Counted from the first letter of the stretch, positions 1,776 to 59,262 are shown. The stretch is DNA of 64,000 nt from Octopus sinensis (GCF_006345805.1 NC_043002.1:95294001-95358000), one strand, 5' to 3'. Notes: generated from the sequence alone by a model not told the origin. Program-made: numbers and translations.

Positions 1776-1779
1776 GTTC

Positions 1780-6299: not shown

Positions 6300-6361
<62 letters not shown>

Positions 6362-6484: not shown

Positions 6485-6524
<40 letters not shown>

Positions 6525-6682: not shown

Positions 6683-6745
<63 letters not shown>

Positions 6746-12582: not shown

Positions 12583-12970
12583 TAGGCACAGGCATAGCTG
12601 TGTGGTAAGAAGTTTGCTTCCCAACCACATGAAGCTGGGTTCAATCCCAATGCATGGCAACTTGGGCGAGTGTCTTCTACTATACCCCCAGGCCAACGAA
12701 AGCTTTATGAGTGGATTTGGTTGACAGAAACTGAAAGAAGCCCATCATATGTGTTTGTTTGTGTTTGTCCCCCACTACTACTTAACAAATGGTGTTGGCA
12801 TATTTATGTCCCCATAATCTAGCAGTTCAGCAAAATTGACCAATAGAATAAGTACCAGGCTTTACAAAACATACTAAGTACTTTGTTATCAATTCACTCA
12901 ACTAAAATCCCTCAAAACAGTGCTCCAGCATGGCTGCAGTCTAAGGACTGAAATAAGTAAAAGATGAAAG
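12583..12970 (+). mobile_element. tRNA-derived SINE family A, full length
   Basis: Head TAGGCACAGGCATAGCTGTGTGGTAAG with B-box GGTTCAATCC, tail GACTGAAATAAGTAAAAG. Confidence 0.8.
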
Positions 12971-17139: not shown

Positions 17140-18410
17140 AAACACAGACATGCAGAATGTAAATAGATACCTTTAATTTTCAAAATCTTTTATTTAATAC
17201 ACAAAGCAAACAATTGAAATGTAATCGATGTCTGTAGGACTACATACTTTAGTATTTAGTTGACATTCTTTTTGCAGTTTTTAATTCAGAAACTCTTTTT
17301 GGCATTGAACTGATGAGCTTTGTGATTGTCTCTTGTGGAATTTCTGCCCACTTTTCATGCAACAATCGAAACAATTCATCTTTAGATTTAGGTTTCTGTT
17401 GAGTTTTTCGTATAGCTCTAGCTAGTATGCTCCAGAGATTTTCAATTGGGTTCATGTCAGGAGATTGGCTTGGCCAAGGAAGCTTTTTGATCCCATTTTT
17501 GATTCCTTTTCACTGTGTGGCATGGAGCCCAATCTTCCATGAATAAAAACTCATTTTTCGCTATGTTATCGTGTGAATACATCAGAAGTAGTCCTTGCTT
17601 AAGTATTTCGATGGGTTTTTTTTTTTTAGAGTTTATGGTTCCGCCACATTCGATCAGCTCAGAATGACCATTGCTGGTGAAAGTTCCCCATACCATTACA
17701 GAGATACCGCCATGTTTCACAGTTGGTTGGAATCGCTTCAACTCAAATTCTTGACTGGGAAGCCTCCAGACCCAAACACGTTCACTGTCCGAAAATAATG
17801 CAAATCTGGATTCATCTGAGAAAATCACTCTATTCCAAAATGATCTGGATTTTTCTGACATCTCCTTAACCCATTTCTTTCTTTTCATGATATTAATTGG
17901 TTGAGGGAGAGGTTTTCTTCTAGCTGCTCGTCCATAATACCCAAGCTTATGCAGATATGTAACATATTCTTGGACTAATTCTAGCTGTTTTGCAATGTCA
18001 GAATCCTTCGAATGGGGTTCGTTTTCCACAATTCTCTTCAAATAGTGAAGCTTCCTTTATAAAGGCTCAGGTCAGCTAGGACAAGAATCTGTTGATTCCT
18101 TTCCTTGGCTTTTGAATTTCACTATAATTCTATTAATAGTAGCAAGAGGAATTTGAAGATTTTCAACAATTTTTCACTGGCTAAGACCAGCCTCTGATTG
18201 CCCAACAATATGACCTCTTTGAAAATCTGACAGTTCTGATGAATTTTTTGTGTATGGCATGGTTACTCTTCACACATGTTTAATATAATGGTACCTGGAA
18301 AGAAAAAGAATAATTACATTGCAAATTCTACCCTGCTGAAAACATATTAAGATGCTTAGATCAGAAATTTTGAAAATTAAAGGTGTCTGTTTATTTCCAT
18401 GCTGCATGGA
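17140..18410 (-). mobile_element. Tc1-family DNA transposon, nearly full length, transposase disrupted
   Basis: ATG at 18260 (MPYTKNSSELSDFQRGHIVG). ORFs 17457-18041 (VIFSDESRF, KHGG.SVMVWG, EDWAPCH) and 17249-17455 ([WPSQSPD]MNPIENLW). TIR remnants 17161-17186 and 18367-18392 match at 24 of 26 positions. Confidence 0.92.
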
Positions 18411-20917: not shown

Positions 20918-21123
20918 ATACTCTTTTACTTGTTTCAGTCATTTTGACTGCGGCCATGCTGGAGCACTGCCTTTAGTCGAGCAAATCGACCCCAGGACTT
21001 ATTCTTTGTAAGCCTAGTACTTATTCTATCGGTCTCTTTTACCGAACCGCTAAGTTATAGGGATGTAATCACACCAGCATCGGTTGTCAGGTGATGTTGG
21101 TGGGTACAAACACAGACACACAA

Positions 21124-21172
<49 letters not shown>

Positions 21173-21360
21173 TACACAAATATATATATATATACAATGG
21201 TCTTCTTTTCAGTTTCCATCTACCAAATCTATTCACAAGGCTCTGGTTGGCCCAAGGCTATAGTAGAAGACACTTGCCCGAGGTGCCACGCAGTGGGACT
21301 GAACCCAGAACCATGTGGTTGGTAAGCAAGCTACTTACTACACAGCCACTCCTATGCCTA
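20918..21360 (-). mobile_element. tRNA-derived SINE family A, full length
   Basis: Same sequence as 1408-1775, ending ACACAGCCACTCCTATGCCTA. Confidence 0.85.
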
Positions 21361-22935: not shown

Positions 22936-23754
22936 CAAGTTGGATGCAGGTGGTTTATTCTGTCTCCCTCTGAATTTTAGTTCATGCAATTGAAAAGACC
23001 TCATTATTTATGGGATGACCCAATACATTTACAATCATCTGCCTGTTTTATTTTTTGGTTAGAATGTCATCGATCTGGCTTGTGTGGATAGGTGATCAGA
23101 TAGTTGTCTAGTTTCCTGAAATTAATCATATGTATATATATTAAGGGATTGGTCTGGTGTAAGAAGCCATAGCCATGTATTTTGCAGTCCCTTAAAATCC
23201 AGGTTGATATTTTCTTGAGGGAACTGCTTGTTGAGAAATGTGGGAGTACTATGGACAAAAGGTGCAATTCTAGAAAACTAATATTCAGTGGAGGGGGAAC
23301 TAAGGAAATAGTGTGTGTGGAGCCTGGATGTAGTTAATGCAGAATATGTGATGATAGGAGAAAAGATGAGTGTGTTGGGCTGGTCTGTGAGCATCAGACT
23401 TCAAGGGAACAGAGGCTGTAGTAGTAGGGTGAGATGACAGCATATATGTGTGCTAGAGGTTAGAGTAAATTTTAAACTTTCAGTTATTCACAATAGCCAT
23501 TTCTGCTGTATTTTTGTTCTCATGTTGTACATCCATTTGTTGCATATTAACACAGATGTGATTGCTCTTTTGTTAGAGTTGTTATTTTAAGTGTAGGATA
23601 CCTTTTCCTACCACTTCAATCATGAGGTCTAAGTGAAAGAATATTTTATCTGTTTGCCAAACAGAAACAAGCAGAGTTGAGTAGCCTGCTGAAGGATACA
23701 ACATGTTTGTCATAAGATTTGAATTTACGGTCTTGTGGTTAGTAGTTTATCTCT

Positions 23755-23982
23755 TTAACCCTTTTGTTACTGTATTTATTTTGAGATGCTCTGTGTTTCT
23801 TTCAATTACTTTAAATAAAACAAAGAATTTAGTAAAATTACTTAGTTATCATTCAGCTAGTGTTAGGAACATAAATTGTGACTAAGGTTTAATGGAAGAT
23901 TTTGATTCAAAACTTACAAAAACAAGACATTTGTACTCAGAGCCAGTGCTGGTTTCAGCTGGATCAGTAACGAAAGGGTTAA
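23755..23982. mobile_element. piggyBac-type MITE family 2
   Basis: TTAA|CCCTTTTGTTAC...GTAACGAAAGGG|TTAA. An inverted sister copy lies at 55424-55651. Confidence 0.8.
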
Positions 23983-26310: not shown

Positions 26311-29300
26311 ATTAGTTGCTGTTGAATGTTCTGGACAAGTAAATATTTATTTCTAGTTCTTTTGAGTATTTATCTTTTACTTGTTTCAGTCACTGGACTG
26401 TGGCCATGCTGGGGCACGGCCTTAAAGGGATTTAGTTAAATAAATCAACCCCAGTCCTTACTTTTTAAAGCTTGAAGCATTGATGTGGGTGCTTGTGCTG
26501 TGTAAAATGCACCTGTGGTGATGCCAAATAAAAAGTACTGATGATGGTTCCGCATAAAAAGCACCCAGTACACTTTGTGGAGTGGTTAGCATTGGGAAGG
26601 ACATCCAACCATAAAAACCAGGCCAGAACAGACTATGGAACTTGGTATCCATCCCATGCCAGCATGGAAAATGGACATTAAGTGATGATGATGATGATAT
26701 GAATTCTGTCAGTGGTTTTGCAAATTTGGCAAAAAAGACTAAGTTATGGATGTAAACAAACTAATACCACTTGTCAAGTAGTGTGAAGACAGACACACAC
26801 ACACACATACATATATGATGGGTTCCTGTCAGTTTCCATATTCACTCACAAGGCTTTGGTCAGCCCAGAGCTAGTAGAAGATTCTTGCCCAAGGTGCCAT
26901 GTAGTGGGGTTGAAACTGAAACCATGTGATTAGGAAGCAAACTTATTATTCCAAAATTATTATGTAATATCTCTAAATTAGCTAAATGTATTAGTATCAT
27001 TTATATAATGTTTCCAAATGAGCAATGTTAATTAACAGTATTTATAAAACACAAAACAATGAAAAGTATTACTAAATTTGCAGTGGAATATAAATTAGAT
27101 TCCCTTGAATTGTTACAAATCCAAAACTAACTTTAAAATACATGGATAAAAATAGTGAATACTTCAGAGTATAACAGCCTAGATTTCTAGGTTAATTAAA
27201 AATTTCTCTAATATCCAAAGTCAAGAACCAAATAAGATTCTAAATTATAAAATAGTTGATGTCCTTAATGCAAGTTTATTTTTGGGTTTTTTTTTTGCTG
27301 CTTGTTTATTTTTAAGAAAATATAATTTTAATTGATATTTGAAATCCAATTATTAATGCAAGTATGGGATGGGATATGAAGTAAAAGTTTATTCCTTAAA
27401 AAAATATAAACTGAAATTATATTCAGTTTAAACCAGTTGGTTTCTACCATTTTTAGCTTATGAACTTTTTTGATTCCTATTTTATTTAGGTGGACACTCA
27501 TAGCCATTCAATATTTAAAAATCCTTTTATATTTTTACAATTAAATATTATGAGGAATTGTATTTGAAAAATTGTTAAAATATTTTGTGTGTTGTAAAAG
27601 TATAAGCAATTTATTGCAGATAAATTTTAATGACAAAACCTTATGTGCACCCCCACTGGTTTAAACTCTAAATCTGATTAAAGCCACTTAATAAGTGGGC
27701 TTGTTTTATTTAATCTTTTTTAATATCGAAAGAGAAATCAAATTTAATCAAGAAACTAGTTGGATATACTTTAAAGTGATGTCTGCAATACAATGGTCAT
27801 AAAATAATTCTGCACTTATTAGTATTGAATGTGTACTAAGTCCTTTGTTTATTCTCATCATTTTATTGTAGCAGTCCACTGAAGAAATCAGTCCACATAA
27901 GATATTGTCATATGAAACTTGAAACTACTTAGCACAGACATTGAAAATTCACATACTTCATTTTTATATTTCTTTATTATCATCTTGTAAGTTTTTCCTA
28001 AAGGTTTGCTCCAATTCATTCTTCATCATTATTATCTGCCTTTTACATTGTAAGATCCTTAATTTTAAAGTTTTGGCTCAGAGTAAGTTGGTGGATAAAC
28101 CTATCATGCTACGGATCCTCAGTGGGAACTTTGATTTTGATTTATGTGGAAGGATTCTTCAGGTCAAAGTCTGTAGAATGTTTTCACTTCAACCATCACA
28201 GCAATATATTGTGATTCTGCTGTAATCTTATGTGTGATTATAAAGCTATAATACTGGTTTGAGCTTCATTTTCACTGTTATTTTCCAATGCAGGAAATGA
28301 CAAATTTTCTGTATCAGCAATACTTTTAAAATATTATAAATGCTTTATGAATTCATTCATTTCCATCAGAATACAAGATGAGGTATAATTAATTAAATGA
28401 TAGTTTTTTCACTGAACCGCAAGGCAAGAGACTGGAGTGAGCTCTGTCAAAGTTTGGTATCTTAGAGAACTAGAATGGAGTATTATACAATGTATATTAA
28501 TGTGGTTAAAAATTTACCAAGGCCTTCATTTTCCTTTATGGCTTTTGCAACTTATTTCTACTTACCAAATCAGCCAATGAAAGGAGCCTGTAAGCAGGCA
28601 CCTGATCTGCTAAAATAACAGCCAAATATTCCACAAATCACACCTTACATCAGGTTGGCTAAATCACTTAGAGTAAAATTTGACAAACATTAAACTGTGT
28701 GTAGGCGAATGGAGAGGGATTGTCTTTGTTCTGTGATGATTTAATCCATCACCCTGTTTAACTTGTCCATCTGACCCTAGCATACCTTTAGTAAAATCCA
28801 TTCCAGATCAGGTATGACTTCGTCCCTTCCTTTTTCTAACCCAGTTATTATCATTATTGCATTTCATCAAAAGCGACCAATTGAATAAGTACCAGGCTTA
28901 GAAAAAAATTCATTTAATTAAAAATTGTTCAAGGCAGTGCCCCAGCATGGCTGCAGTCTACTGACTAAAACAAGTAAAAGATAAAAAGATTACATGTCTA
29001 TATTCCCCATATCTAAAGGACACAAGAACTTTCACACACATGTATACACATCGTTGTCATCATCATCATCATTATATATTTTTCTTGTTGGCATGGGTTG
29101 AGCAGTTCAACAGGAACTGACAAGTCAGAAGACTGCACCATGCCCTGTTGTCTGTTTTGGCATAGTTTCTACAGCTGGGTGCCCTTCCTAACACCAACCA
29201 CTATACAGAGTGTACTGGGTGCTTTTTTACATGACACCAGCAGCAGTAAGGTCACCAAGTGACTTGCAAGACCAGACCCTTCAACTGAAGATGGTGGAGA

Positions 29301-29671: not shown

Positions 29672-29878
29672 AAGGTGGCAAGCTGGCAGAAACATTAGCA
29701 CACCGTGTGAAATGCTTAGCAGTATTTCATCTGTCTTTACATTCTGAGTTCAAATTCCACCGAGGTCAACTTTGCTTTTCATCCTTTCAGGATCGATAAA
29801 TTAAGTACCAGTTGCATACTGGAGTCGATCTAATCAACTGGTCCCTGCCCCAAAATTTCTGTGCCTAGAGTAGAAAAG
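29672..29878 (+). mobile_element. SINE family B
   Basis: AAGGTGGCAAGCTGGCAGAAACATTAGC...GAGTTCAAATTCC...CATCCTTTCAGGATCGATAAATTAAGTACCAG. Confidence 0.8.
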
Positions 29879-30824
29879 TATGTATATGTGTATTTGTAAG
29901 TATATGTATATATGTGTGTGCGTATTTTTGTGTGTGTGTGTGTGTGTGTGCATGTGATTCCTGATTCCATTTTGTTTTGTCTGTGTGGCTGGGGGATTAT
30001 GGCTTAATCAGAGGAAGGAGATCATTGACCATACGCATTTTCAAGGTCTCCAAGTCTAGTAGATGAAAAGGAGAAAGTTTCTTTTGACTGGAAACTTGGC
30101 TCTTGCAACTAAGTTGTAACTCTGCTAAAGACACCTTCCTTAAGAGCCAAGTAGGTGGAATTAAACTAGATGATGGATTATGTCTACCACCCAAGAACAG
30201 GCATGCTTTCCATATTGAGCTTTCACATGGTTTCTGTCTGTCAAATTCCACATTCAAAGTGAGACAATAGTTAAAAAAACAAAAAAAAAGAAGACACTTG
30301 GCAAAATTGTCGTGCAAAGAGTTTGAATCCAACACCACACAGCCACAATACAAAATTCTTTACTGCACAGCCACACCCACCCCAGCTATATGATATTTTT
30401 GCAAATAAACAAGCCAATGTTCCTTCTAATAAGATTTTAATACAAATAAAAACACTGATCGTTAGCAATTGTTTTCTGATTACATTTCTTTCTATTTAAT
30501 TCATTTTATTTTAATTTAGATAATTATTGTTTCTCTATTTAAACTTTTATTGAGGCACCTATTTATTGTTTCAATTTAGCTTAAATATAATTTTGTTTAT
30601 TCCTTTCATTGAGTTGCTGTTCATATGTATAAAATTCCTAAGAAATTATCTTCCCCATGTTAAAGAACTTGAGTTAATTCAGTCTTTGATATCTTGTGGA
30701 TTTTCTGAGATAAAATCTGTTTGCTGAAACAAATAAAATCTGACATATTATACCCTATGATTGGTTTTTTTACACAGCTACATTTGATGCCTACCTCAAA
30801 AATATTGTCTTTTATTGTTAAGTA

Positions 30825-30998
30825 TATTTGCCACCTAAATGTGGCAGTCCCATAGAGGATGATGCTACTGTTTTTTATAGCCCCAGGAAGACATCTCCTC
30901 CAGCTGGCTAATGACACACTGTGTCTGATTATTATTTGCAAAGGGAAATCATCATTCCCATCTCTAGGCTTATATGATACACACAGACCCAGGTTTCA
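30825..30998 (+). repeat. dispersed copy of the unclassified repeat found in tandem at 47251-48075
   Basis: GGCAGTCCCATAGAGGATGATGCTACTG...CCTCCAGCTGGCTAATGACACAC...GGCTTATATGATACACACAGACCCAGGTTTC aligns with 47270-47438. Confidence 0.75.
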
Positions 30999-31119
30999 TC
31001 CTTTTATTAATTTAATTCTTCTACATTATATTTCAAATGGTTGCCTTCCACTTTAGGGCCCACAAAATATTTCAATAGTTATTGACTCTTTACAAACTAC
31101 AAATCAACCCATACTAAAT

Positions 31120-34099: not shown

Positions 34100-34500
34100 A
34101 GGTGCAGGTGTAGCTGTATGCTAAGAAGGCACAGGAGTGGTTGTGTAGTAAGAAGCTTGCTTACCAACCACATGGTTCTGGGTTCAGTCCCACTGTGTGG
34201 TGCCCTGGGCGAGCGTCTTCTATTATAGCCTCAGAATGACCAAAGCCTTGTGGGTGGATTTGGTAAATAGTAAGTAAAAGAAGCCTGCCGTGTGTGTTGT
34301 CTGTCTGTTTGTCCTCCACTACCACTTGACAACTAGTGTTGGTGTGTTTACACCTCCGTAACTTAGCAGTTTGACAGAAAGAGACTAATGGAATAAGTAC
34401 CAATTTTAACAAAAAATAAGTACTTTGGTTGTTTTTTTCAACCAAAAATGCTTCAAAGCAGTGCACCAGCATGGCCAGTCAAATGACTCAAACAATTAAA
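34100..34500 (+). mobile_element. tRNA-derived SINE family A with duplicated head
   Basis: TAGGTGCAGGTGTAGCTGTATGCTAAGAA followed by GGCACAGGAGTGGTTGTGTAGTAAGAA and the full body. The tail of another + copy (33930-34095) precedes it. Confidence 0.8.
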
Positions 34501-42186: not shown

Positions 42187-42548
42187 TCTTTTACTTGTTT
42201 CAGTCATCTGACTGCGGCCATGCTGGAGCACCGCCTTTTTAGTCGAGCAAATCAACCCCGGGACTTATTCTCTTTTGCCGAACCGCTAAGTGACGGGGAC
42301 GTAAACACACCAGCATCGGTTGTCAAGCAATGCTAGGGGGACAAACACAGACACACAAACACACACACACATACATATATATATATACATATATACGACA
42401 GGCTTCTTTCAGTTTCCGTCTACCAAATCCACTCACAAGGCATTGGTCGGCCCGGGGCTATAGCAGAAGACACTTGCCCAAGATGCCACGCAGTGGGACT
42501 GAACCCAGAACCATGTGGTTGGTTAGCAAGCTACTTACCACACAGCCA
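42183..42548 (-). mobile_element. tRNA-derived SINE family A, young
   Basis: CpG-rich copy of family A. Confidence 0.85.
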
Positions 42549-42659
42549 TATATATATATATATATATATATAATCATCATCATTGTTTAACGTCCGCTTT
42601 CCATGCTAGCATGGGTTGGATGATTTGACTGAGGTCTGGCGAACCAGATGGCTGCACCA

Positions 42660-43534: not shown

Positions 43535-43925
43535 ACTCTTTTTACTCTTTTACTTGTTTCAGTCATTTGACTGTGGCCATGCTGGAACACCACCTTTAGT
43601 CAAACAAATCGACCCCGGGACTTATTCTTTGTAAGCCTAGTACTTATTCTATCGGTCTCTTTTGCCAAACTGCTAAGTTACATGGACATAAACACACCAG
43701 CATCAGTTGTCAAGTGATGTTGGGGGGGGGGACAATCATATACACACACGTACATATATGTATATAAATATACAACAGGCTTCTTTCAGTTTCCATCTAC
43801 CAAATCCACTCAAGGCTTTGGTCGGCCTGAGGCTATAGTAGAAGACACTTGCCCAAAGTGCCACACAGTGGGACTGAACCCGGAACCATGTGGTTGGTAA
43901 GCAATCTACATACCACACAACTACT
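43535..43925 (-). mobile_element. tRNA-derived SINE family A
   Basis: Full body as at 1408-1775. Confidence 0.85.
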
Positions 43926-43927
<2 letters not shown>

Positions 43928-43975
<48 letters not shown>

Positions 43976-44290
43976 TGTGTGTGTGTATATATGTATATGC
44001 ATGTGTGTGTGTATGTATATGCATGTGTGTATGTATATGCATATATGTATATGCATGTGTGTGTATATACGTATATGCATATGTATATGCATGTGTGTAT
44101 ATATGTATATGCATATGTATATACATGTGTGTGTATTTGTATATGCATGTATGTATATATATATATATATATACATGCATGTGTGTATATATATATATAA
44201 GTATATGCATGTGTTTGTAAGTATATGCATATGTGTGTATATATATGTATGTGCATGTGTGTATATATGTGTATGTGTGCATATATATCT
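43928..44290. repeat. compound (TA)n/(TATGCATGTGTG)-type microsatellite
   Basis: Direct inspection. It is the source of six spurious ORFs. Confidence 0.95.
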
Positions 44291-45432
44291 AGTCACTTTA
44301 TAAAAGTTCTGTTCTCACTGCTGTGAGTTCTGCTATGACTGATCTACCTGTTACCTTTCACACATCTTCTATTTCACTAAACATATGCCAAAATCATCAT
44401 CATTTCTCAGCTTTTAATCAGAAACACAACATCAAAATAGAGATATTGACTTTGTTGTCAGCTAAAAAATCTCTTTTGCAGGATCTGCCAATTCACGAAT
44501 GTATATTTTCTCTCACATACACATCATAAACATTTTCATGTTTATACAGTTATTAATAAAACTAATTGTGCCAAGCTTCTCTGTCTCGGATTTCAAGATA
44601 AATAGCATTTCATGTTAGAAAGATACATGTACACTTAACAATAGGTGCCAGGCTGTCTCTGCTTTCACCAGAGGCAACATTATTTGTGTTTGATTATCCC
44701 TTGGATGATGATTCACTTCTAAAAAAAGGAAGCCTGTATTTGTGTTGAATATTCATTTATTTTCTTCTTTAAAAAGAACTTGTTTTAAATTACTTATTCC
44801 TTAATAGCTGACATATGACATTGTCTTCAGTAGCAATACTACAACAACAAGAATAACATATACTTTACAGATTTAGATTTCAGTTCACATTGTGAAATCC
44901 TACACAAGATTCTTCTTTTTATATTTGATATAAAATTTCTTTCCTTTTGGCTATCATGTATATATAGCTATTATTGTGACACCTACACTGTAAAAGATTG
45001 ATTTCATTGGCTAATTGAATAATGCAAATCATGTTTATTAACATTGTGAGTGTATTTGTGTGCATATGCATTAAAATGAGCATATTTTCAGGCATGAAAT
45101 GTGCAATAATGTCGATAGTTTATCTGATCTGTAGTCAGTAATTAGTGTGTGAAATCTGAATGAAGAACATAGTGATTTAATTGATGATATCAGAGAAAGA
45201 AATCTGATAGTTATCGTAGAATTATGCGAAACTCTGGTTATAATTATTGGTAAATTTCTTATTGGAGATCAAAACGAGTCGACAGAAATGAAATTGTGGT
45301 GTAATTTTAAATATCCTAATCTTTGGTCGATAAATCATTGACTGTAGTTTATTCTGTTCAAGGAATGTGTGTGTACATATATATACACATACACACAAAC
45401 CAAATATATGTATGAATGAATGTGTATGTATG

Positions 45433-45804: not shown

Positions 45805-47250
45805 AATTCTCTTTCACTATTTTTAACTCTTCCATCACATTTCTTGACATTTTTGTCAGTATACACCACTCTTCTCCCACTACTTCCATCCACTACAAAC
45901 ACACCAACTCACACTCCTACTTAAATTCTCCTCCTCCCACTCTAACCCACACCAAGCTCTCCATCCCTTACTCCCAATTCCTCCGGCTGCACAGGCTCTG
46001 CAGTGACAACTATGACTTTGAGTCTCAATCTCAACTCATAGCTTGCCACTTCATCCTTCATGGATATCCCCTCACTACTATCCACACTGCCTTTGCCAGA
46101 ACATATTCCATATACCATGCCTCTGCTCTTTCTCCTCACACCCATACCACCATTGACCATCTCCCATTTCCCCTCACCTACCACCCCTCCAATGCACCAT
46201 TCTCCAAGCCTTCCTATGACTCCAGTCCAATCCCTCTACCTCTCACATCTTCCTCAACATACCCTTCCCTCCTTCAAATGAGCCCACAACCTGCATGACC
46301 ACCTGGTCCACAGTTTTTTTCCCCCACTCCCACCCACACTGCTATACTGACCCCTACCTCTCCAATGCCAACATCCTCACAGGCATCCATCATATCACTG
46401 ACTCCTTTACCTGCACTTCCAGCAACATCATTTACTGCATCTCTTGCTCTTTCTGGCCTTCCCTGTACATTGGTCAAACGGGATGCCACTTGGCTGACCG
46501 GTTCACAGAGCACCTCTGAGATATCAGGCTCAACAATGACACTCTGGTCATGTGCCATTTCTGCTCTACCAGTCGTTCACTACATCTGTGTTCAGACTGT
46601 CTTTGCATAGGGGCCATCTGGACTCCCACCTTCGCTGTGAACAGGAATTAATTTTCTCTCTTCACTCCTTTGCACCACATGGGCTCAACTCCCTCCTCTC
46701 TTCACCTGACCCCCCCTACTCTCCTCATCTTACTCCCCTTCCTCTCTTCACTCCTACCCATCTCCTCTCTTCACCCCACACACCACACTACCCTACACCA
46801 CTCCAAACACTAGCACTGACCAGTTCCCAGCACCCACATCCACAAACAATCTTCAATAGCATCACCACACATACCACTATATGAACAATCACACGTTAGA
46901 TGCACATGCCCACACACATCAAAGTCACTAGCCCCTATTCACACTTACACATTCACACACCATTCTCACATACACACTTTCATGTGAGATCGCCATCACT
47001 TTATCATCTCCCTTTTTTCCAACCTCTTCTTTCAAACATTTTTCTAATCAGTTGCCATGTTTGACTGCTAAATCTATGGGTTTTTTTCATTCTCTCTCTG
47101 TTTATTTTCTCTTATTCTTTTCTGTTGAAGAGCATAAGCTCAAAATGTAAGAGGCTTTTCCTTTTTCCCGAACATCAAACTATTACACCTGCTTGTTGTT
47201 CATACGCCTGTCTTCATCTTCTGTTTTTATATAAATTTCAACCATAATAT
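45805..47250 (+). mobile_element. Penelope-like retroelement, 5'-truncated: RT C-terminus, GIY-YIG endonuclease and 3' terminal region
   Basis: SITFLDIFVSIHHS..TSIHYKHTNSHSYLN..HTKLSIPYSQFLRLHRLCSD (RT end/thumb). HITDSFTCTSSNIIYCISCSFWPSLYIGQTG..LADRFTEH (GIY-YIG). EQELIFSLHSFAPHGLN (C-terminus). Stops and frameshifts are present. Confidence 0.9.
47117..47154 (+). ncRNA. decayed minimal hammerhead-like motif in the Penelope 3' region
   Basis: CTTTT-CTGTTGA-A-GAGC(ATAA)GCTC-AAAA-TG-TA-AGAGG. The deviations from GAAA-CG-UH are the changes expected from CpG deamination. Confidence 0.5.
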
Positions 47251-48075
47251 AGTAATGTTTGTATGTCGACATAACATAGCAGTCCTGTAGAGGACAATGT
47301 TACTGTTGTTTTAGCCTCAGGAAAACATCCCTTCCAGCTGCTTAAGGACACACAGTCTGTGTCCGTATATAGCATTTGCAAGGCAGGTCATCACTCCCAT
47401 CTCGAGCCTTATGTGATACTCACAGACCTAGGTTTCTGGATGTTATCTGTCCTCAGTGTGAGACAGTCACCAGCTAGTGACAAAAGCTATCTCCACTTGC
47501 AAATACTACATGTTCTTTAAGTGACATGCAGTTGCTGATCTCGTATTGTGAAAAACATGTTTTAAATCTCTGAGCGAGAGAAACACAGTAACAGTATTGG
47601 ATAGTAATGTTGATATGCCAACATAACATGGCAGTCCTGTGAAATACGATGTTACTGTTGTTTGAGCCCTGGGAAAACATCTCTTCCAGTGTCGGTCAGG
47701 GAGTTTGACTGGGGTGGTACATCTGTCAAACAGTAACGCAGGTGTCCCAAGGTGAGCTCAGTGTGGACAGAAACCACATGTCGAGCAAAAGGGTAAAAGT
47801 TTGCTTGAACTCGATTTTTAGTACAAATATGGACCACGAAAGCATGGCCCATCAATCCTTTCCGAACAGCAGCAAGCTATGCGCCCGCCGAGAGGTGTCA
47901 AAAAAGTTACCACAGGGATAACTGGCTTTTGGCGGCCAAGCGTTCGCAGCGACATCACTTTTTGATCCTTCGATGTTGGCTTATGTGATACTCACAGACC
48001 TAGGTTTCTGAATGTTGTGTGAGACAATCACCTGCTAATGACAATTACTAGCGATCTCCACTTGCAAACACACAC
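47251..48075 (+). repeat. two tandem copies (period ~352 bp) of an unclassified repeat; the second carries the 28S fragment
   Basis: Block A at 47251-47338 and 47603-47689. Block B (TTATGTGATACTCACAGACCTAGGTTTCTG...CTCCACTTGCAAA) at 47409-47512 and 47981-48068. Confidence 0.85.
47687..47981 (+). pseudogene. 28S: 28S (LSU) rRNA fragment, domain V (P-loop through the central PTC loop)
   Basis: GGGAGTTTGACTGGGG(T)GGTACATCTGTCAAA, AAGTTACCACAGGGATAACTGGCTT, GGCGGCCAAGCGTTC and TTTTTGATCCTTCGATGT(T)GGCT are universally conserved eukaryotic LSU segments in the correct order. The fragment is isolated and carries several transitions. Confidence 0.95.
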
Positions 48076-48469
48076 ATTTTTTATTAAAGCTGCAAACTTA
48101 TATCAAGACTATTACTCAGAGTTTCATGTCCCTTTCATCAGACAGCTGTTTACTTCACAACTGTCAGATGAATTGGAATGTAAAATGCTGAGTAACAGTT
48201 TTGTGATAATTTTACAGCTTTAATAAAAGTATATTACTCTATGTTTGGTATTCGAGTACTATTTTTTCCACTTCATTTTGCTCTTATATGTTCACCTGTG
48301 TGTGTTTGTTTGTGGTTCTGTTGTTTAGCTCCAATCTTGATTGAGCAAAAGCAATCCAACCATGATGATTCTGCGTAATTATGCCAAGGTATCTTTTTCC
48401 CAAGATGGTAGGGAGAAAGAGAGATTTGAAAGAAATTTAGTTGCTATTTCTTGTAGTTTTCATTAACTT

Positions 48470-48673
48470 GTTCTTTTATTCATCTCAGTCATTTTGATTG
48501 TGGCCATACTGGAGCACTACCCTTAGTTGAGCAAATCGACCCCAGGACTTATTCTTTGTAAGCCTAGTACTTATTCCATCAGTCTCTTATGCTGGACCAC
48601 CAAGTTATGGGGACATAAATACACCAGCATCGATGTAAAGCAATGTTGGGACACACACATAAACATATACAAG

Positions 48674-48719
<46 letters not shown>

Positions 48720-48897
48720 ATATACACATATAACTGGCTTCTTTCAATTTCCATCCACCAAATCCACTCACAAGGTTTTGGTCGGCCCAAGGTTATAGTA
48801 GAAGACACTTGCCCAAGGTGCCACACAGTGGGACTGAACCTGGAACCATGTGGTTGGTTTGCAAGCTACTTACCACACAGCCACTCCTGCGCCTATA
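48470..48897 (-). mobile_element. tRNA-derived SINE family A, full length
   Basis: Ends ACCACACAGCCACTCCTGCGCCTA. A family B head fragment follows at 48900-48965. Confidence 0.85.
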
Positions 48898-51189
48898 AAA
48901 AAGACAGCCGAAATACCGCTAAGTATTTCACCCGGCGCGCTAACATTTCTGCCAACTCACCACGTTGTGTGTATGTGTGTGTGTATGTATGGATAAGATA
49001 TTAGCTTACCAGTTCATATATACCAAAATTTATAATGAAATGAATAAATGCTGCAATTATTATTATAAATGCTGCATGTTAATAAGCATGATTAATTGTT
49101 TGTTTTAAATAGAAAATCACATTAGAACAGAAATATAAGTAAAGTGACCCACAAGAATATGGAAACTAAAATAGGTTGTAACATTTAATCCGCTTCGAAA
49201 TTTAATAATAATAATAATAATAATAATAATAGTGTGCTGCAGTTTTCACTCTACATTTACAAGTAGAATGACCTTTTAATGTTCATGTGATCTCTGAATA
49301 AACTAAGTGGAAACTATTCTTGAATAGTCATGTCATAAATAAATGCTGGTTTTCTATAAGAACGTGTTAAAATTTAATTTGAGCAAGCAACAGTGCAAAA
49401 AAAAAAGAAAGAAAAGAAAAAGAGAGAGAGAGAAAAATAGAGAAAGGAAGTCATTTGAGATGTTTACAAGGGTTTATCTAAGACCCCTAGGCAATATGTA
49501 AAACGAAAAAACATTTGAAGACAAACGTTTTTAGATATGACAAAAATGGTAAATGTTTAAGAAAACCTGTATTTATATAATTTAATTTCTTGAAATATTA
49601 TTAAATTTTTTTTCAGAAATGCATTTTGGCTTTTGATATTCTTAAACTCAATGGAAATTAAAGTAATGTTCATAGAGCTAACATGAATGAATTATGTCTT
49701 TTGGTTTCATTTTCCACATACTAAGAGAAAATAAACCTCTTCTAGTTTTGCTTGGCACAAAAATTCAATAATAGTCAGAGTGAATATGGTTTTGTGAGAA
49801 CATGTTAAAAATACATTGGAGAAACAGCAGTAAAAAACAAAAATGTTTAGTTACATGATATTAATAATAAGTTAGGTGTGCATAATGTGCTGTGAGAGTG
49901 TACATGTATATTGTAAAAGTCAAATATGTAAAAGCAGATTGATAATGGTCAACAGTAAAAAGATAGGTAGGGAAGTTTATATATTTTAAACTGATGGAAA
50001 TATTAATTGGCATCTCATTCTGCAAACAATTTAAAACAGCTGATTCTATTCTATTGAGGAAAAACCCAAGAGAAAGGTAACTCTAGTTGAAAGGAAGAAA
50101 GAGAAATAAGACGGCTTGTCTGTGGCTGTTGATTGAAAATAAGAGAAAATCTTGACTTCTAACTTCAATAATTCTATAAGTAAGTAGTCCAACAGTCTAA
50201 AACTTACTTATAAACTACTGGTCTTTGATTGGTTAAAATAACGTATAAAAAAACAATGAAACAATAAAATGTTACTTGAATGAGATTACTACAACCCTTA
50301 TTATGTTGGTTTCAGTTTGACATTCTTAGCATCCATTTCATTTTCTCTAAATAATTAGTTATATAAAGTTTATTAAAAGATAGTGTTTCACAAAAATTCT
50401 TATATTTGCAATTACTTTCATTATAGTTCTCATGAATTTTGCTTGTATCCTGAAAAACTCTACCAGAAAAAAATTAAGATAAGCATGTAACATATATTTT
50501 GGTGGGTAACCACTTAAAAGTGTTATCAGATGCCAAGTGATTACTAGGATTAGAGCAAGTTATCTTAGCTTCCATCTTCTCATAAAACTAGAGTGCTATG
50601 ATTTCCTTGACAAAATGCAGTATTTTCACAAGTCATTCTCTTAATATGGTATCTCCCTTTAGAAAGACAATTCAACTAATTATTAAGTACCTGTCAAGGT
50701 ATGCTTAGTAGAGAATGGCACACATAATATAAACAATATTTTTAAGATGTAACATAGAGTATTTATATATTTCATGTGTGCATGTGTGTTTATATGTACA
50801 CTTACATAAACATATATATATATATATACATGCTTGCATACTCACAATCTATGTATATCTGAAAACATGTTGTCTATCACATAATTGTTGTCTTACCTCA
50901 ATTAACACTACAAATTTTATCCAGATTAATTACAAGGAAAACAAATTACTTCTGTAATTTAAGTGTCTGGAATCAACTTTGTGTCACATGGTTTTATCTA
51001 ATTAATTACTTGGTAATTTTTCTTTATCATCCATCTTTTGTTAATGATAGGAAGGGTAAATTTAATGAAATCAGCTATTTTATATAATTCTTATTAAATG
51101 GCATAGCACAGAATTAAGTCATCAAATTCATGAAACAAGGCACTAGACCAATACCATGACAAAGGTGTTGCATTGAAATGCAATATATT

Positions 51190-51470: not shown

Positions 51471-52059
51471 GCATTTTATGCCTATAGCCTTTCCTGTTTT
51501 TCATGCTCAGGATATTTTTTATTCCAGTGGCTTTTGAAAACATATAATACTAACATGGAATGTAAATATTTGTATGCACGTGTACCCACACATATGCACA
51601 CACATACACACTCACATGCATGCACGCACACAATGGACCTCAATACAGTTTCTGTCTAAGAAATTTACTAACAAGGCATTGGTTAGCATGGGGTTATAGT
51701 AGAAGACACTATTTTTTTATCTTCTTATCTTTGCCTGATGTTCAACACAGTGGAATTGATACCACCAAAAAAAAAAAAAAAACTACGTAGTTGCAAAGGG
51801 AACTTTGTTACTGCATAACCATGTCTGCACCTAATGTGGAGATGATGATGACTATCATTACACTTCATGTATTTTGAGCAAATACTGTAATACATGCAAG
51901 AACTAAGAATGCTATAAACATGTGCACTATTACAAACATTGTCTCTAGTCTGAGAAGATAATTACCTCACTTCCAGCAGCCAAAATGAGTAGTACAAGTA
52001 TTTCAAAGGGCCAGCCTTGTCACATTCTATGTTCTACTGAATATCCCTGAGAACTACAT

Positions 52060-52665: not shown

Positions 52666-54589
52666 GACCTATTAAACAGGCACATTGCATGAAGAGAGAG
52701 AATCAATTCTATGCCAAAGTCTGAAGTATTATGACCTTTTTTGAGAAAGATACAGCAGTAGTTTCCCATTGCCTTCTGCCAGCTTATATATAGGTTGTTT
52801 TTTTTTTCAGCTAATCTCCTCTCCGAAGCTCCTTGAGGCCAAGGGCCTATTTAATCCTTAGGCAAGAGGAAGGTTCACATGACATCAGAACATATTTACA
52901 TGGCAGTGGGATTGTGTGACACATGTAGGGAGCCAGACCTTCTCTAACTTCTGTATGCCTTAACCACAGGACCATCATCTGCTATTTAATCTATAACTGA
53001 GGCCCTTGACATATACTACTACACTGGGTCAGAGCAAGCATGAAAGTAGTTGTGACCAAGGAATAATTCCTGAACTCCTGAGCTGGAATATTGCCACAAG
53101 ATGCAATTTAATGTTTTACTCAGGGCATTACTTTTCTGATTGTGTCATATAGATAAAAGAATAAGTAAACAAAAATCAAATTTGACAGTATAAAATTGAA
53201 GATCTTATGCTGTCAATAGAAACAAGAACAGAATTTTATTGGTACACTGTCAAGGAAACGGCTGTACCTCTCTTGAATATCATTTCTTAGCTTGCTTACC
53301 AAAGGAAGTTTCATAGGAATGAACGAATCAAAGATCACCATAATGTATAAACTGTGCCATCATACTATTGTACTGCTGTCATGCCATGAAAAAAGCCCAA
53401 GCATTGAGAATACTGCCTTTGAACTGGTAAAGATTTCAATTAACTTTAGAAGGAAGGATCTATGAAATGACACCGTAAACTTCTACTCTTGTGTCATTCC
53501 TTCATCTAAACAGACTTGCTTTCATCTGAATCTGTTATGACTTTATGCAATTGCATTGGGGCAGGCAAATTTTTTAAAGAATCTCCCTTTAGCCAAATAG
53601 AAAATTGGAGAAATGTAGTTTTTCAGAAAAAGGAGGGAAAAAAAGCTATAATTTTATTATTAGTGTTAGATATTAGTTGAGTTATAAAGCTCTACAATCT
53701 TCTTCGAAAAAACAAGTTCTGACTTTCAGCTCATCCTGAAATTTTTTATGTTTCATTCTTAAGTTTAGCCAGTCATCTTGATTAAAATACATTCCAAGTT
53801 CATTTTATTCATTCTACTAGTTTCAGTCATTGTGAAATACCTTGAAGGGCCTCAGTTAATCATCTCTATCTCCAATACTTATTTCAGTTTGAGGCTTATT
53901 TTATCAATCTATTTTGTTGAACCTCTAAGTTACAGATGTGAAGCGGCACAACAACACACAATCTATATATATATATATATAGAGAGAGAGATAGAGATAG
54001 ATAGATAAATACATACATACACACACACACACATACATACATACATACACACACACATACATACATGTATATAAAACGGGCACCTTTCAGTACCCGTCAA
54101 TCAAATCCACTCACAAGGTTTCAGTTGGCCTGGGGCCATAGTAAAACCCACTGGCCCAATGTGCCACGCATATATATTACAGGCTTCATCACAGTTTACA
54201 ACTATTAAATTCCACTCACAGAGTATTAGTCAACTCAAGGATATAGTAGATAACACTTGTCCAAAATGCCATGTTGTAGGTTCAAATCTTGGACTGTGCT
54301 GTTGTGAAGATAACCTCGTAACAACAGTCACCATTTTATCTTTAGTTTATTACTTTTATGTATCCCAGCTCACAAAGCAGCATATAAAGAAGATAGTTTT
54401 CTTGAGACAGCAGTCTTCCTATACAAGTATCAAGTTTAATTGTAACAGCAACAATGATAATCTATTATGTTTCACTATTTATGTATCTTGCTAGAAGTCA
54501 CAGCTACAATACATTTTTGTCTAAACATCTTAATAAAAGAAGGATAACTAAGAGGAATTTTCATGTGCATTGTTACTGGTACTGCATAT

Positions 54590-54826
54590 TCTTATTTCTT
54601 TATTGCCCACAAGGGGCTAAACATAGAGGGGACAAACAAGGACAGACAAAGGGATTAAGTCGATTACATCAACTCCAGTGCGTAACTGGTACTTATTTAA
54701 TCGAACCCGAAAGGATGAAAGGCTAAGTCGACCTCAGCGGAATTTGAACTCAGAATGTAGCTGCAAATAAAATACCACTAAACATTGCACCTGATGTGCT
54801 AACGTTTCTGCAAGCTCACCGCCTGG
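54590..54826 (-). mobile_element. SINE family B, young
   Basis: Near-exact reverse complement of 1076-1280, plus the head. Confidence 0.85.
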
Positions 54827-55423: not shown

Positions 55424-55651
55424 TTAACCCTTTTGTTACCAACCCGGCTGAAACCGGCCCTGGCTCTGAGTACAAATGTCTTGTTTTCATAAGTTTTGAA
55501 TTAAAATCTTCCACCAAACCTTAGTCCCAATTTATGTTCCCAACACTAGCTTAATGATGACTAAGTTATTTTACTAAATTCTTTGTTATATTTAAAATAA
55601 TTGAAAGAGACACAGAGCATCCCAAAATAAATACGGTAACGAAAGGGTTAA
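55424..55651. mobile_element. piggyBac-type MITE family 2
   Basis: TTAA|CCCTTTTGTTACC...GGTAACGAAAGGG|TTAA. Confidence 0.8.
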
Positions 55652-56924
55652 AGTGGTTACATGCTATTTAACCAATGGAGTAGCTCCACTTGACAGCTAC
55701 CCCAGCTCAGAGTTGACCTGGAAACAGAGTTAGTTAAATGATGATTCCACACTCCTCAAAATCCTAGAACACCTGAACCAGGGCCCCACTACCAGATGCA
55801 GTTTAAAGACATACCCCAGAACTAATATATTTCAAATCTTAACTAGTCATTACTATCTTATGATTAAAGAAATGGAACACAAATAGAATAATAACCAATA
55901 AAAGAGTCAAACAGTATTTATAGACTTACTGAAATATTCTTTAGTACATGTGTAAAAATTATAAGTAATCTTTCACAAAAATCTATCTCAGATTGAAATA
56001 TGTGTTAGTTTTGGTCAATTAAATCATTTATCATAATAAATATTAATGATATTCATGGAACACATTTATACACTGAAATATAAAAGTATAAATTTAACTC
56101 TTGGAGGCCTCAGACCTAAGCAATATCAATTCAAGTGAATGGTATGACTTGTATGAAAAGAGATTAAAAAATGTTTCAATATATCTGACAAAGATTGGGA
56201 TCTATCTGTATACTCCAATTATTTTAATCAGTTTTAACATTTACTGTTATTTGTAAATGTATCAAACACTCAGTAAACAAGTCTCTTTAATGACCTAATT
56301 TTTACAATATATTTTATAGTGCTTAAGGCTTGCATACCTGTTTTTAATCTTTTAATATCTTTTGTCTTCAAATTGAGGTTGATATATGAAAATTTCTTGA
56401 AGCATTATTATCTAAATTCTTTATGCAAAAAATGAAATCCAAATTAAAGCTAAAGCACAATTATTAAAACGCTAAAAGAAATCTCATTGATGAGTGTATC
56501 TTTAATAATCAACCAAAACTGATGATTTTTAAAATATATCTTAAAAGCAATCTTTATTTTCAGGAAATATCCAGGTATTTTCTGACAAAGAGTTAATATG
56601 ATTAAATACAACAGTAAACACATTTGTTGAAAATGTAACTGAATGAAATACATCACTATCAGTTACATAAGTATCAGTTATATACTGAAGTTCATTACTT
56701 CAATCACACCAGTTCTTTGCACATGTTGTCTTTGTGCCTAGGAGGAAAAAAAATTATTATCATTATTATTGATGATGTCAACTGATGAAGTGTTTATGAA
56801 GGTTCTTGTAAAAGGTAGAAACACTGGTAGCATTAAAGAATAAGATAGATGTTCTGCAGTTTAGTGGTTTCTCTGATTAAAGTCCATCTTTTAACAATCT
56901 ATATATCATGCTTCAAGCCAGTTG

Positions 56925-58854: not shown

Positions 58855-59262
58855 TATTCTTTTACTTATTTCAGTCATTTGACTGTGGCCTTGCTGGGGA
58901 CCGCCTTTAGTCAAACAAGTCAACTCAGGACTTATTCTTTGTAAGCCTAGTACTTATTCTATCGGTCTCTTTTGCAAAACCACTAAGTTACAGGGACATA
59001 AACACACCAACATCAATTGTCAAGTGATGGTGGGGGACAAACACAGACACACAAATTCTTATATAGATATATAGATATATATATGTATACACATGACAAG
59101 TTTCTTTCAGTTTCCATCTACCGAATCCACTCACAAGGCTTTGGTTGATATGAGGCTGTCATAGAATACACTTGCCCAAGGTACCATGCTGTGGGACTGA
59201 ATCCAGAACCATGTGGTTGGGAAGCAAGCTTCTTACCACACACCCATTCCTGCACCTATTTG
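58855..59262 (-). mobile_element. tRNA-derived SINE family A, full length
   Basis: Full body as at 1408-1775. Confidence 0.85.

What the first reader, a model, noticed from the sequence alone, without database searches (positions are those of the whole stretch)
47687..47981. 28S rRNA peptidyl-transferase segment swapped into the middle of a dispersed repeat
Seen: the repeat has the layout A-middle-B in two copies (47251-47512 and 30825-30998). In the third copy, A (47603-47689) runs directly into ~295 nt of 28S domain V and then directly into B (47981). The ~70-bp middle is absent, so this is a replacement rather than an insertion, and no TSD or poly(A) is visible. The left junction shares CAG (repeat ..TTCCAG| versus rRNA ..CAGTGTC). 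The right junction shares GGCT (rRNA ..GATGTYGGCT versus the 30.9-kb copy ..TAGGCT|TAT). Established: this segment includes the P-loop and the A2451-equivalent GGGATAAC. Inference: a double-strand break was patched from an rRNA or cDNA template, or RT switched templates during retrotransposition. If the chimera has been copied elsewhere, it would be a new rRNA-carrying element family.
Basis: partly seen in the sequence, partly recalled or inferred. Interest (0 to 1): 0.72.

Follow-up and report, generated by a model that had tools for sequence, protein, structure and literature searches.

The report
Dead 28S rRNA scrap inside repeat
One copy of a short interspersed repeat has had its ~70-bp centre replaced by a decayed 295-bp piece of 28S ribosomal RNA; this is a real but old, non-functional, apparently one-off scar of a kind already known from other genomes.

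Summary
Window 47687-47981 (+) is a eukaryotic 28S domain-V fragment (Rfam LSU_rRNA_eukarya, 227 bits, E 8e-58). It sits exactly between the two arms of a ~270-bp repeat whose other two copies (47249-47519 and 30817-30998) carry an unrelated 63-68-bp middle instead. Neither the arms nor the middle resemble 28S, so this is a replacement and not a decayed rRNA-derived element. The 28S piece is dead and old. It differs at 23 of 207 columns that are invariant in five real 28S genes, mostly by transitions and CpG decay, including P-loop and PTC positions. This rules out rDNA contamination or misassembly. Its decay (8%) matches copy 3's private divergence (6.8%). No TSD or poly(A) flanks the piece, ~65-70 bp of target is missing, and the junctions share 2-4 nt. 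The most likely cause (about 0.5) is repair of a break inside the repeat, patched with rRNA- or rDNA-derived filler. A double reverse-transcriptase template jump is the main rival. No second chimera was found, but the source genome could not be searched. 28S/LINE-1 chimeras, SINE28 and scattered rRNA pseudogenes are already documented, so interest is low.

The parts
47601..47689 (+). Arm A of repeat copy 3 (the left part of the repeat, up to ...CTCTTCCAG)
   Evidence: 83% identical to copy 1 at 47249-47337; nhmmer arm-A profile E 2.5e-29; no similarity to real 28S beyond shuffles.
47687..47981 (+). Decayed 28S rRNA fragment (domain V: P-loop to the GAUGUCGGCU region, including GGGATAAC), in rRNA sense on the + strand. 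Bases 47687-47689 (CAG) and 47980-47981 (CT) are shared with the repeat arms.
   Evidence: Rfam LSU_rRNA_eukarya 227.5 bits, E 8e-58; 76-82% identity to real 28S loci L001-L017 over 47699-47981; 23 of 207 invariant columns mutated, 19 of them transitions and 7 CpG-type.
47980..48078 (+). Arm B of repeat copy 3 (CTTATGTGATACTCACAGACCTAGGTTTC... to ...CTCCACTTGCAAACAC...). Its 3' end abuts a MITE-like hairpin element.
   Evidence: 78% identical to copy 1 at 47408-47519; nhmmer arm-B profile E 3.5e-32; no similarity to 28S downstream sequence beyond shuffles.
47249..47519 (+). Repeat copy 1, intact A-middle-B layout, 81 nt upstream of copy 3
   Evidence: Self-blastn, alignment, nhmmer; no Rfam hit at E up to 10 on either strand.
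47338..47405 (+). The 'middle' of copy 1: the segment that copy 3 lacks and that the 28S piece replaces. It contains a small hairpin, GGACACA-CAGTC-TGTGTCC.
   Evidence: Alignment; not similar to the 28S piece (148 of 500 shuffles score at least as well) or to whole 28S on either strand; DNA fold z = -1.9 to -2.2.
30817..30998 (+). Repeat copy 2, A-middle-B(start), truncated at the B end and flanked by an exact 8-nt direct repeat CTTTTATT (30809-30816 and 31001-31008)
   Evidence: Self-blastn 79% to copy 1; alignment; the flanking 8-mer abuts both ends, empirical P about 0.008 in this window.

Best explanation
This is a one-off, ancient, non-functional scar. One copy (copy 3) of an unclassified ~270-bp interspersed repeat suffered a break in its central part. 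About 65-70 bp were lost, and the gap was filled with a ~295-nt sequence copied from the host's 28S rRNA or rDNA (domain V). The filler was joined at 2-4-nt overlaps on each side, by end-joining or microhomology-primed repair; this could include reverse-transcriptase-assisted, endonuclease-independent repair using abundant rRNA. The piece has since decayed neutrally together with its host repeat.

Shown: the A-28S-B layout; the absence of the family's middle; the lack of any 28S similarity in the arms or the middle; the heavy decay of the 28S piece; the absence of a TSD or poly(A) around it; and the short overlaps.

Inferred: that a break and repair produced it, rather than a polymerase jump during copying; that the donor was the host's own 28S; and that it never propagated.
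For: Arms and middle are unrelated to 28S. Decay is 23/207 invariant columns overall and 15/188 (8.0%) outside the expansion segment, with 19 transitions against 4 transversions, 7 CpG-type changes and 4 of 8 invariant CpGs lost. The window's CpG o/e is 0.26. Together these show a long neutral residence in the genome and exclude live rDNA or rRNA contamination. No TSD or poly(A) surrounds the 28S piece, and a 63-68-bp target segment is missing; these are the hallmarks of repair-type capture rather than target-primed insertion. The junction overlaps are CAG/CCAG and CT/GGCT. No other rRNA scraps lie within 45-51 kb, and there is only one rRNA hit in 64 kb. Copy 2 has an 8-bp TSD abutting both ends (P about 0.008) and is truncated at the B end. 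If the family is a retroposon, its sense strand is then the minus strand and the 28S is antisense to it, which disfavours a simple cDNA template jump.
Against: The decay of the 28S piece (8.0%, CI 4.5-12.8) equals copy 3's private arm divergence (6.8%, CI 3.0-12.9; Fisher p = 0.83). The capture is therefore about as old as the copy, which is what a capture-at-birth (template-switch) model predicts; a repair event at a random later time would more often look younger. Microhomologies of 2-4 nt are only weakly non-random. The class of the repeat and its sense strand are not established: there are three old copies, and only one has a credible TSD. The source genome could not be searched, so 'one-off' rests on a single 64-kb window.
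Confidence: 0.5

Rival explanations
1. Double template jump by a reverse transcriptase while copy 3 was being made. cDNA synthesis on the repeat's RNA left the template at the B/middle boundary, copied ~295 nt of abundant 28S rRNA, then returned to the repeat RNA at the middle/A boundary and finished arm A.
For: 28S/LINE-1 chimeras with 28S pieces of 50-482 nt (median 269) are documented and attributed to template switching or RNA ligation (PMC13174262). Double jumps giving tripartite chimeras are documented (PMC2104539). The 28S decay equals copy 3's private divergence, as expected for capture at birth. There are short overlaps at both junctions. Copy 2's 8-bp TSD suggests the family is mobile.
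Against: No TSD or tail was found around copy 3. Known chimeras place the cellular RNA at the 5' end of a truncated element, not inside an otherwise full-length one. Returning to the same template 65-70 nt further on is an extra rare step. If copy 2's truncation marks the 5' end, the element's sense is the minus strand and the 28S is antisense, which a single-cDNA jump does not produce. The middle is only a weak hairpin, so there is no strong structural reason to skip it.
Confidence: 0.2
2. Replication-based template switching (MMBIR/FoSTeS type). A collapsed fork inside the repeat re-primed by microhomology on rDNA, copied ~295 nt, and switched back.
For: Microhomology at both junctions and a clean replacement without a TSD. 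Copies 1 and 3 are adjacent and are each other's closest relatives (private divergence 5.9% and 6.8%, against 17.8% for copy 2), so a local complex rearrangement is conceivable.
Against: The sequence flanking copies 1 and 3 is not duplicated, so there is no sign of a larger complex rearrangement. The overlaps are short. Nothing distinguishes this positively from end-joining capture.
Confidence: 0.1
3. The chimera is a member or founder of a propagating subfamily in which the repeat's central module is a 28S-derived module (modular reshuffling of a non-autonomous element, analogous in outcome to SINE28).
For: rDNA-derived modules in non-autonomous TEs and a 28S-derived SINE are known (PMC10946416; PMC4994717). 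The capture is as old as the copy, which is compatible with inheritance from a chimeric master.
Against: There is only one chimera among the three copies in 64 kb. There were no hits to the arm motif in the metagenome or viral collections, and no chimeric ORF among database proteins. No retroposition hallmarks surround copy 3. This could not be tested genome-wide.
Confidence: 0.07
4. Assembly artefact: an rDNA or rRNA-derived read stitched into a repeat.
For: rDNA is multicopy and repeats are assembly-prone. No reads are available here.
Against: The piece differs from universally invariant 28S positions at 11% of columns, with a CpG-decay signature, so it is not live rDNA. The two flanks are the complementary arms of one repeat in the correct order and orientation. 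There are no Ns.
Confidence: 0.02
5. The whole repeat family is itself derived from 28S rRNA, copy 3 is simply the least-deleted member, and the 'middle' is a collapsed 28S.
For: The Infernal alignment extends weakly into both arms (47654-47686 and 47982-48030). Copy 3 carries GTGAAATAC, a 28S motif found upstream of the captured piece in L001/L006.
Against: Copies 1 and 2 give no LSU hit at E up to 10. Arms and middle against real 28S flanks, and against whole 28S on both strands, fall within the shuffle distributions. The 9-mer is not significant (258 of 1000 shuffles).
Confidence: 0.01

Closest known systems
[quoted passage not shown]
   Same: A few-hundred-nt internal fragment of 28S rRNA (there a median of 269 nt, range 50-482; here ~295 nt) fused directly to a repeat element, without being a functional rRNA gene.
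   Different: There the 28S piece sits at the 5' end of a 5'-truncated LINE-1, with a poly(A) tail, TSDs and an L1 endonuclease motif. Here it is internal, flanked by both arms of a short non-LINE repeat, with no TSD or poly(A) and a target deletion.
Tripartite chimeric retro-pseudogenes formed by double template jumps (Gogvadze et al. 2007, PMC2104539)
   Same: A three-part layout in which a foreign RNA copy is fused directly on both sides to other sequences.
   Different: Those join three different transcripts and, in the fungal case, are flanked by a 14-bp TSD. Here parts 1 and 3 are the same element in register and no TSD was found.
SINE28, the 28S-derived mammalian SINE (Longo et al. 2015, PMC4994717)
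   Same: 28S sequence dispersed outside the rDNA array in association with a short interspersed element.
   Different: SINE28 derives from the 3' end of 28S, is Pol III-transcribed and is present at multiple loci. Here the fragment is from central domain V, there is a single locus, the piece is decayed, and there is no evidence of transcription or amplification.
Scattered rRNA pseudogene fragments and captured filler DNA at repaired double-strand breaks (rDNA-derived 'junk' reviewed in PMC10946416; endonuclease-independent LINE-type repair insertions, from my own knowledge)
   Same: No TSD, no poly(A), loss of target sequence, short junction microhomology, and neutral decay afterwards.
   Different: Nothing substantive. 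The only unusual aspect is that the break happened to lie inside a recognisable repeat, so both the deletion and the insertion can be read off by comparison with sister copies.

Membership tests
Dispersed LSU-rRNA pseudogene fragment | Significant sequence and structure similarity to eukaryotic 28S rRNA | tested here: met
   Rfam RF02543, 227.5 bits against a gathering score of 50, E 8e-58; blastn 76-82% to real 28S loci.
Dispersed LSU-rRNA pseudogene fragment | Loss of universally conserved positions (non-functional) | tested here: met
   23 of 207 invariant columns changed, including the P-loop C-to-T at 47715 and PTC-region sites 47929, 47954, 47957 and 47977.
Dispersed LSU-rRNA pseudogene fragment | Located outside an rDNA unit (no adjoining rRNA, ITS or other 28S parts) | tested here: met
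   Only one rRNA hit in 64 kb at gathering threshold, and none further at E up to 1 within 45-51 kb. The flanks are repeat arms.
Break-repair capture (end-joining filler / endonuclease-independent insertion) | No target-site duplication and no poly(A) at the inserted piece | tested here: met
   No direct repeat of 6 nt or more flanks 47687-47981; there is no A-run.
Break-repair capture (end-joining filler / endonuclease-independent insertion) | Deletion of target sequence at the insertion point | tested here: met
   The 63-68-nt middle present in copies 1 and 2 is absent from copy 3.
Break-repair capture (end-joining filler / endonuclease-independent insertion) | Short microhomology at the junctions | tested here: inconclusive
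   The left overlap is CAG (or CCAG) and the right is CT (up to GGCT). Chance P is 0.065 for 3 nt or more and 0.18 for 2 nt or more. The exact lengths need the species' own 28S and a family consensus.
LINE-mediated chimeric retrocopy (template switch; U6/L1 or 28S/L1 type) | TSDs flanking the whole chimera, and a 3' tail | tested here: not met
   No flanking repeat of 6 nt or more around copy 3, with or without the adjacent MITE; no tail.
LINE-mediated chimeric retrocopy (template switch; U6/L1 or 28S/L1 type) | Cellular RNA at the 5' end, joined to a 5'-truncated retroelement | tested here: not met
   The 28S is internal, and both ends of the repeat are present.
LINE-mediated chimeric retrocopy (template switch; U6/L1 or 28S/L1 type) | Same-sense orientation of the captured RNA and the element | tested here: inconclusive
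   The element's sense strand is unknown. Copy 2's TSD plus B-end truncation hints at minus-strand sense, i.e. an antisense 28S.
SINE28-like rRNA-derived SINE | [quoted passage not shown] | tested here: not met
   The fragment's solid core matches about positions 2620-2889 of the 3401-position LSU model (the whole Rfam hit spans 2412-2985), which is central domain V and not the 3' end.
SINE28-like rRNA-derived SINE | Multiple dispersed copies with their own TSDs | not testable with these tools
   There is one copy in the window, and no animal genome collection is available. The metagenome and viral scans were empty.
rDNA-specific retrotransposon (R1/R2 type) carrying 28S flank | The 28S boundary lies at the element's specific insertion site, with an RT-encoding element adjoining | tested here: not met
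   There is no RT ORF near the locus, and the flanks are arms of a short repeat. The fragment starts about 200 model positions downstream of the CCUGUUGAGCUUGACUCUAG landmark. That the R1/R2 sites lie upstream of this point is from my own knowledge and was not tested.

The most novel reading that the evidence does not exclude
The A-28S-B chimera is not unique. It would instead be the founder or a member of a propagating subfamily of a cephalopod-type short interspersed element whose central module was swapped for 28S domain V: an invertebrate counterpart of rRNA-carrying SINEs, created by module exchange rather than derived from an rRNA gene.
Probability: 0.06. Interest if true: 0.5.

Novelty: new member of a known kind. 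Interest (0 to 1): 0.15.

Why it matters
It matters little on its own. It is a clean, readable example of how abundant rRNA or rDNA sequence ends up as filler in a genome. Sister copies of the host repeat reveal both what was lost (~65-70 bp) and what was gained (~295 nt), which is rarely visible for repair scars. If genome-wide searches showed many copies with identical junctions, it would document module exchange between an rRNA and a non-autonomous element in an invertebrate. In practice it is a caution for annotators: the fragment scores well above Rfam's gathering threshold yet is a dead relic, and the covariance-model alignment over-extends into unrelated flanks.

Tried and rejected
1. 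Whole repeat derived from 28S. The Infernal extension into the arms prompted this. Copies 1 and 2 give no LSU hit at E up to 10, and arms and middle against real 28S flanks, whole sequence and both strands fall within shuffles. Rejected.

2. Copy 2 as a C/D-box snoRNA retrocopy. The hits to snoU31b and SNORD52 have E 0.2-0.6 and lie far below gathering scores. The 'C box' arises from a CpG-decayed site that differs in the other copies. Rejected.

3. The GTGAAATAC cluster in copy 3's arm A as a second 28S-templated patch. The 9-mer is not significant (258 of 1000 shuffles) and the motif is absent from the upstream sequence available in four of the seven reference loci. Rejected.

4. A larger tandem duplication containing copies 1 and 3. 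The flanks are unrelated. Rejected.

5. Arm A sharing a module with the window's abundant SINE. There were weak nhmmer hits (best E 0.0065), but the alignment of the SINE copies shows no convincing shared block. Not pursued.

6. Retrieving the same locus or other copies. Four window ORFs are not on record. The arm-B motif is absent from the metagenome and viral collections. The protein search with the junction-spanning ORF returned only seven rDNA-derived RRT15-type spurious ORFs from metagenomes, none chimeric.

7. Finding a close-lineage 28S through the expansion-segment 20-mer. The single hit (L018) is a chance 21-mer in a GC-rich bacterial-type contig.

8. A fragile or skippable hairpin in the middle. 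There is only a 5-7-bp stem, with z = -0.1 to -2.2. Too weak to carry any argument.

9. tRNA-like head. ARAGORN found no tRNA in the window.

Full report
**What is there**

Window 47687-47981 (+) is a fragment of eukaryotic large-subunit rRNA. Rfam's LSU_rRNA_eukarya model matches 47654-48030 at 227.5 bits (gathering score 50), E 8.3e-58, model positions 2412-2985 of 3401. The high-confidence part runs from GGGAGTTTGACTGGGG (P-loop helix) to GATGTTGGCT. It includes GGGATAACTGGC, which by my own knowledge is the E. coli 2445-2452 equivalent; the piece corresponds roughly to E. coli 23S positions 2235-2511.

Real 28S genes were recovered from public contigs through their spurious RRT15-type ORFs. 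They align to 47699-47981 at 76-82% identity. It is the only rRNA match in the 64-kb window. Nothing else rRNA-like appears within 45-51 kb even at E up to 1; the miRNA-model hits there are TA/TG microsatellites far below their gathering scores.

**The repeat**

Self-blastn, profile searches with nhmmer and a motif search (where none of 100 shuffles gave a match) find exactly three copies, all on the + strand:
- Copy 1, 47249-47519.
- Copy 2, 30817-30998.
- Copy 3, split into arm A (47601-47689) and arm B (47980-~48078).

Pairwise identities are 73-83%. Copies 1 and 2 share a 68/63-nt middle between the arms. Copy 3 has the 28S piece at exactly that place (alignment).

**Is the repeat itself rRNA-derived?**

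The covariance-model alignment creeps into both arms, so I tested this idea directly.
- Copies 1 and 2 give no LSU hit at E up to 10.
- The middle is no more similar to the 28S piece than shuffled sequence: 148 of 500 and 434 of 500 shuffles score at least as well.
- Arms A and B were compared with 600 nt of real 28S upstream and downstream of the captured region. Arms and middle were also compared with whole 28S contigs on both strands. All lie inside the shuffle distributions.

The extension is a local-alignment artefact, and the repeat and the 28S piece are unrelated sequences. A private cluster of substitutions in copy 3's arm A creates GTGAAATAC, a 28S motif found upstream of the captured region in two references. 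A 9-mer match is not significant (258 of 1000 shuffles).

**Real or artefact, young or old?**

I aligned the piece to five diverse real 28S genes.
- It differs at 23 of the 207 columns that are invariant among them (11.1%): 19 transitions and 4 transversions.
- Seven of the changes are CpG-type, and 4 of 8 invariant CpGs are lost.
- Excluding the poorly alignable expansion segment (47858-47895), it differs at 15 of 188 columns (8.0%, CI 4.5-12.8).
- Hits include the P-loop (47715) and PTC-region positions (47929, 47954, 47957, 47977).

The window as a whole is strongly CpG-depleted (o/e 0.26 against GpC 1.05). The piece has therefore resided in this genome as neutral DNA for a long time. It is not live rDNA or rRNA stitched in by an assembler, and it cannot be functional rRNA.

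In a three-way comparison of the arms, copy 3's private divergence is 6.8% (CI 3.0-12.9). Copy 1's is 5.9% and copy 2's is 17.8%. The 28S decay and copy 3's private divergence are indistinguishable (Fisher p = 0.83), so the capture is about as old as copy 3 itself.

**Junctions and insertion hallmarks**

- Left junction...CTCTTCCAG|TGTCGGTCAGGGAG. The repeat continues ...CCAG|CTGC in copies 1 and 2. Real 28S sequences have CAGTG-like sequence just upstream of the core, and L001 reads CCAGTGTCG, so the overlap is CAG or possibly CCAG.
- Right junction...GATGTTGG|CT|TATGTGATAC. Real 28S continues GGCT|CTTCC, and the repeat reads GCCT|TATG (copy 1) or GGCT|TATA (copy 2). The overlap is therefore CT for certain and GGCT at most.
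- Chance probabilities are 0.065 for 3 nt or more and 0.18 for 2 nt or more at a junction. The microhomology is suggestive but not strong.
- No direct repeat and no A-run flank the 28S piece.
- No credible TSD flanks copies 1 or 3.
- Copy 2 is flanked by an exact 8-nt repeat, CTTTTATT, abutting both ends of the homology. The empirical P is about 0.008 for random pseudo-elements in this window, or about 0.02 after allowing for three copies.

Copy 2 is truncated at the B end. If the family is a target-primed retroposon, the B end is its 5' end, its sense strand is the window's minus strand, and the 28S piece is antisense to it. This rests on one copy and is an inference.

**The element class remains unknown**

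- There is no tRNA-like head and no Rfam family.
- There are no terminal inverted repeats and no tail.
- The full-length RNA fold is unremarkable (z = -1.7).
- The middle contains a small hairpin present in both copies, but its energy is only marginally better than shuffles.

**Mechanism**

The features are those of a repair-type capture: an internal position, loss of 63-68 bp of target, no TSD or poly(A) around the piece, and short overlaps. A break inside copy 3 was resected and patched with filler copied from 28S rRNA or rDNA. I rate this at about 0.5.

The main rival is a double template jump by a reverse transcriptase while copy 3 was being made, at about 0.2.
- In its favour: the equal ages, and precedent. 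Eighteen 28S/LINE-1 chimeras with 50-482-nt 28S pieces have been reported in primates and ascribed to template switching or RNA ligation (PMC13174262). Tripartite chimeras from double jumps are also known (PMC2104539).
- Against it: the absence of retroposition hallmarks around copy 3, the need to return to the same template, and the probable antisense orientation.

Replicative template switching (0.1) cannot be separated from end-joining with the data at hand. A propagating chimeric subfamily (0.07) cannot be excluded, because no animal genome is searchable here. The window has one chimera among three copies. The metagenome and viral scans for the arm motif were empty. The protein search with the junction-spanning ORF returned only rDNA-derived spurious ORFs.

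**Comparison with what is known, and verdict**

Dispersed rRNA pseudogene fragments, rDNA-derived modules in non-autonomous elements, SINE28 and 28S/LINE-1 chimeras are all documented (PMC10946416; PMC4994717; PMC13174262).

This locus passes the tests for a dead dispersed LSU fragment and for a repair-type capture. It fails the defining features of a LINE-mediated chimeric retrocopy (TSDs, tail, 5' position of the captured RNA) and of SINE28 (3'-end origin).

It is a new instance of a known kind. It is neat because sister copies make both the deletion and the insertion legible, but it would not surprise a specialist. Interest 0.15.

The taxon was not verified.

Noticed in passing
window 48079-48228: A ~150-bp palindromic MITE-like element with 46-nt terminal inverted repeats (83% complementary) and a 58-nt loop. 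It directly abuts, and probably truncates, the 3' end of repeat copy 3, and it explains the weak miRNA-model hits on both strands there.
   Followed up: partly
window 1430-1810(-), 20940-21350(-), 42230-42550(-), 43560-43930(-), 48480-48900(-), 58870-59250(-), 12580-12860(+), 34120-34400(+), and fragments at 2733-2861, 5738-5872, 13350-13563, 26872-26948, 51646-51706, 54014-54320: A very abundant SINE with a tRNA-like head (...GGTTCTGGGTTCAGTCCCACTG...), an internal TA/TG microsatellite and a long conserved 3' body. It is a different family from the repeat that hosts the 28S piece. ARAGORN does not call the heads as tRNAs.
   Followed up: partly
window 30809-30816 and 31001-31008: An exact 8-nt direct repeat, CTTTTATT, abuts both ends of repeat copy 2 (empirical P about 0.008). 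This is a likely target-site duplication, implying the host repeat is a mobile element and that copy 2's missing B end is a genuine truncation at insertion.
   Followed up: yes
window 47249-47519 and 47601-48078: Copies 1 and 3 lie only 81 nt apart in the same orientation. They are each other's closest relatives (private divergence 5.9% and 6.8%, against 17.8% for copy 2), yet their outer flanks are unrelated. Adjacent insertion of one subfamily and an old local duplication cannot be told apart.
   Followed up: partly
window 47639-47647: Four of copy 3's eight private substitutions cluster to convert GTAGAGGAC (copies 1 and 2) into GTGAAATAC. This equals a 28S motif lying 127-288 nt upstream of the captured region in two reference 28S genes. 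It is not statistically significant (258 of 1000 shuffles) and is probably coincidence.
   Followed up: yes
window 5841-7100 and 43850-44300: Long TA/TG-rich microsatellite arrays. The first has a higher-order tandem unit of ~384 bp (6117-6416 against 6501-6800, 88% identical). These generate the long spurious ORFs rich in Y, I, C, V, M and H residues.
   Followed up: no
window 17457-18041 (-): A 194-aa ORF with a weak Tc3-type transposase HTH match (PF01498, 22.8 bits, below the 31.5-bit cutoff). It is probably a decayed Tc1/mariner transposase remnant.
   Followed up: partly
whole window: Strong CpG depletion (CpG o/e 0.26, GpC o/e 1.05) at 35% G+C, consistent with heavy germline methylation-driven decay of this repeat-rich non-coding region.
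   Followed up: partly
window 23740-23982 and 55424-55666: A 243-nt inverted pair, 88% complementary and 31 kb apart: two opposite-strand copies of yet another interspersed repeat family. Several further families (for example 1085-1278 / 54593-54786, and 29673-29839 / 54658-54824) are visible in the repeat listing.
   Followed up: no
window 30855-30931 (+) and 30943-30959 (-): Copy 2 of the host repeat gives weak C/D-box snoRNA model hits (snoU31b E 0.58; SNORD52 E 0.21), far below gathering scores. The apparent C box is a CpG-decay product not shared by copies 1 and 3, so this was judged to be chance.
   Followed up: yes
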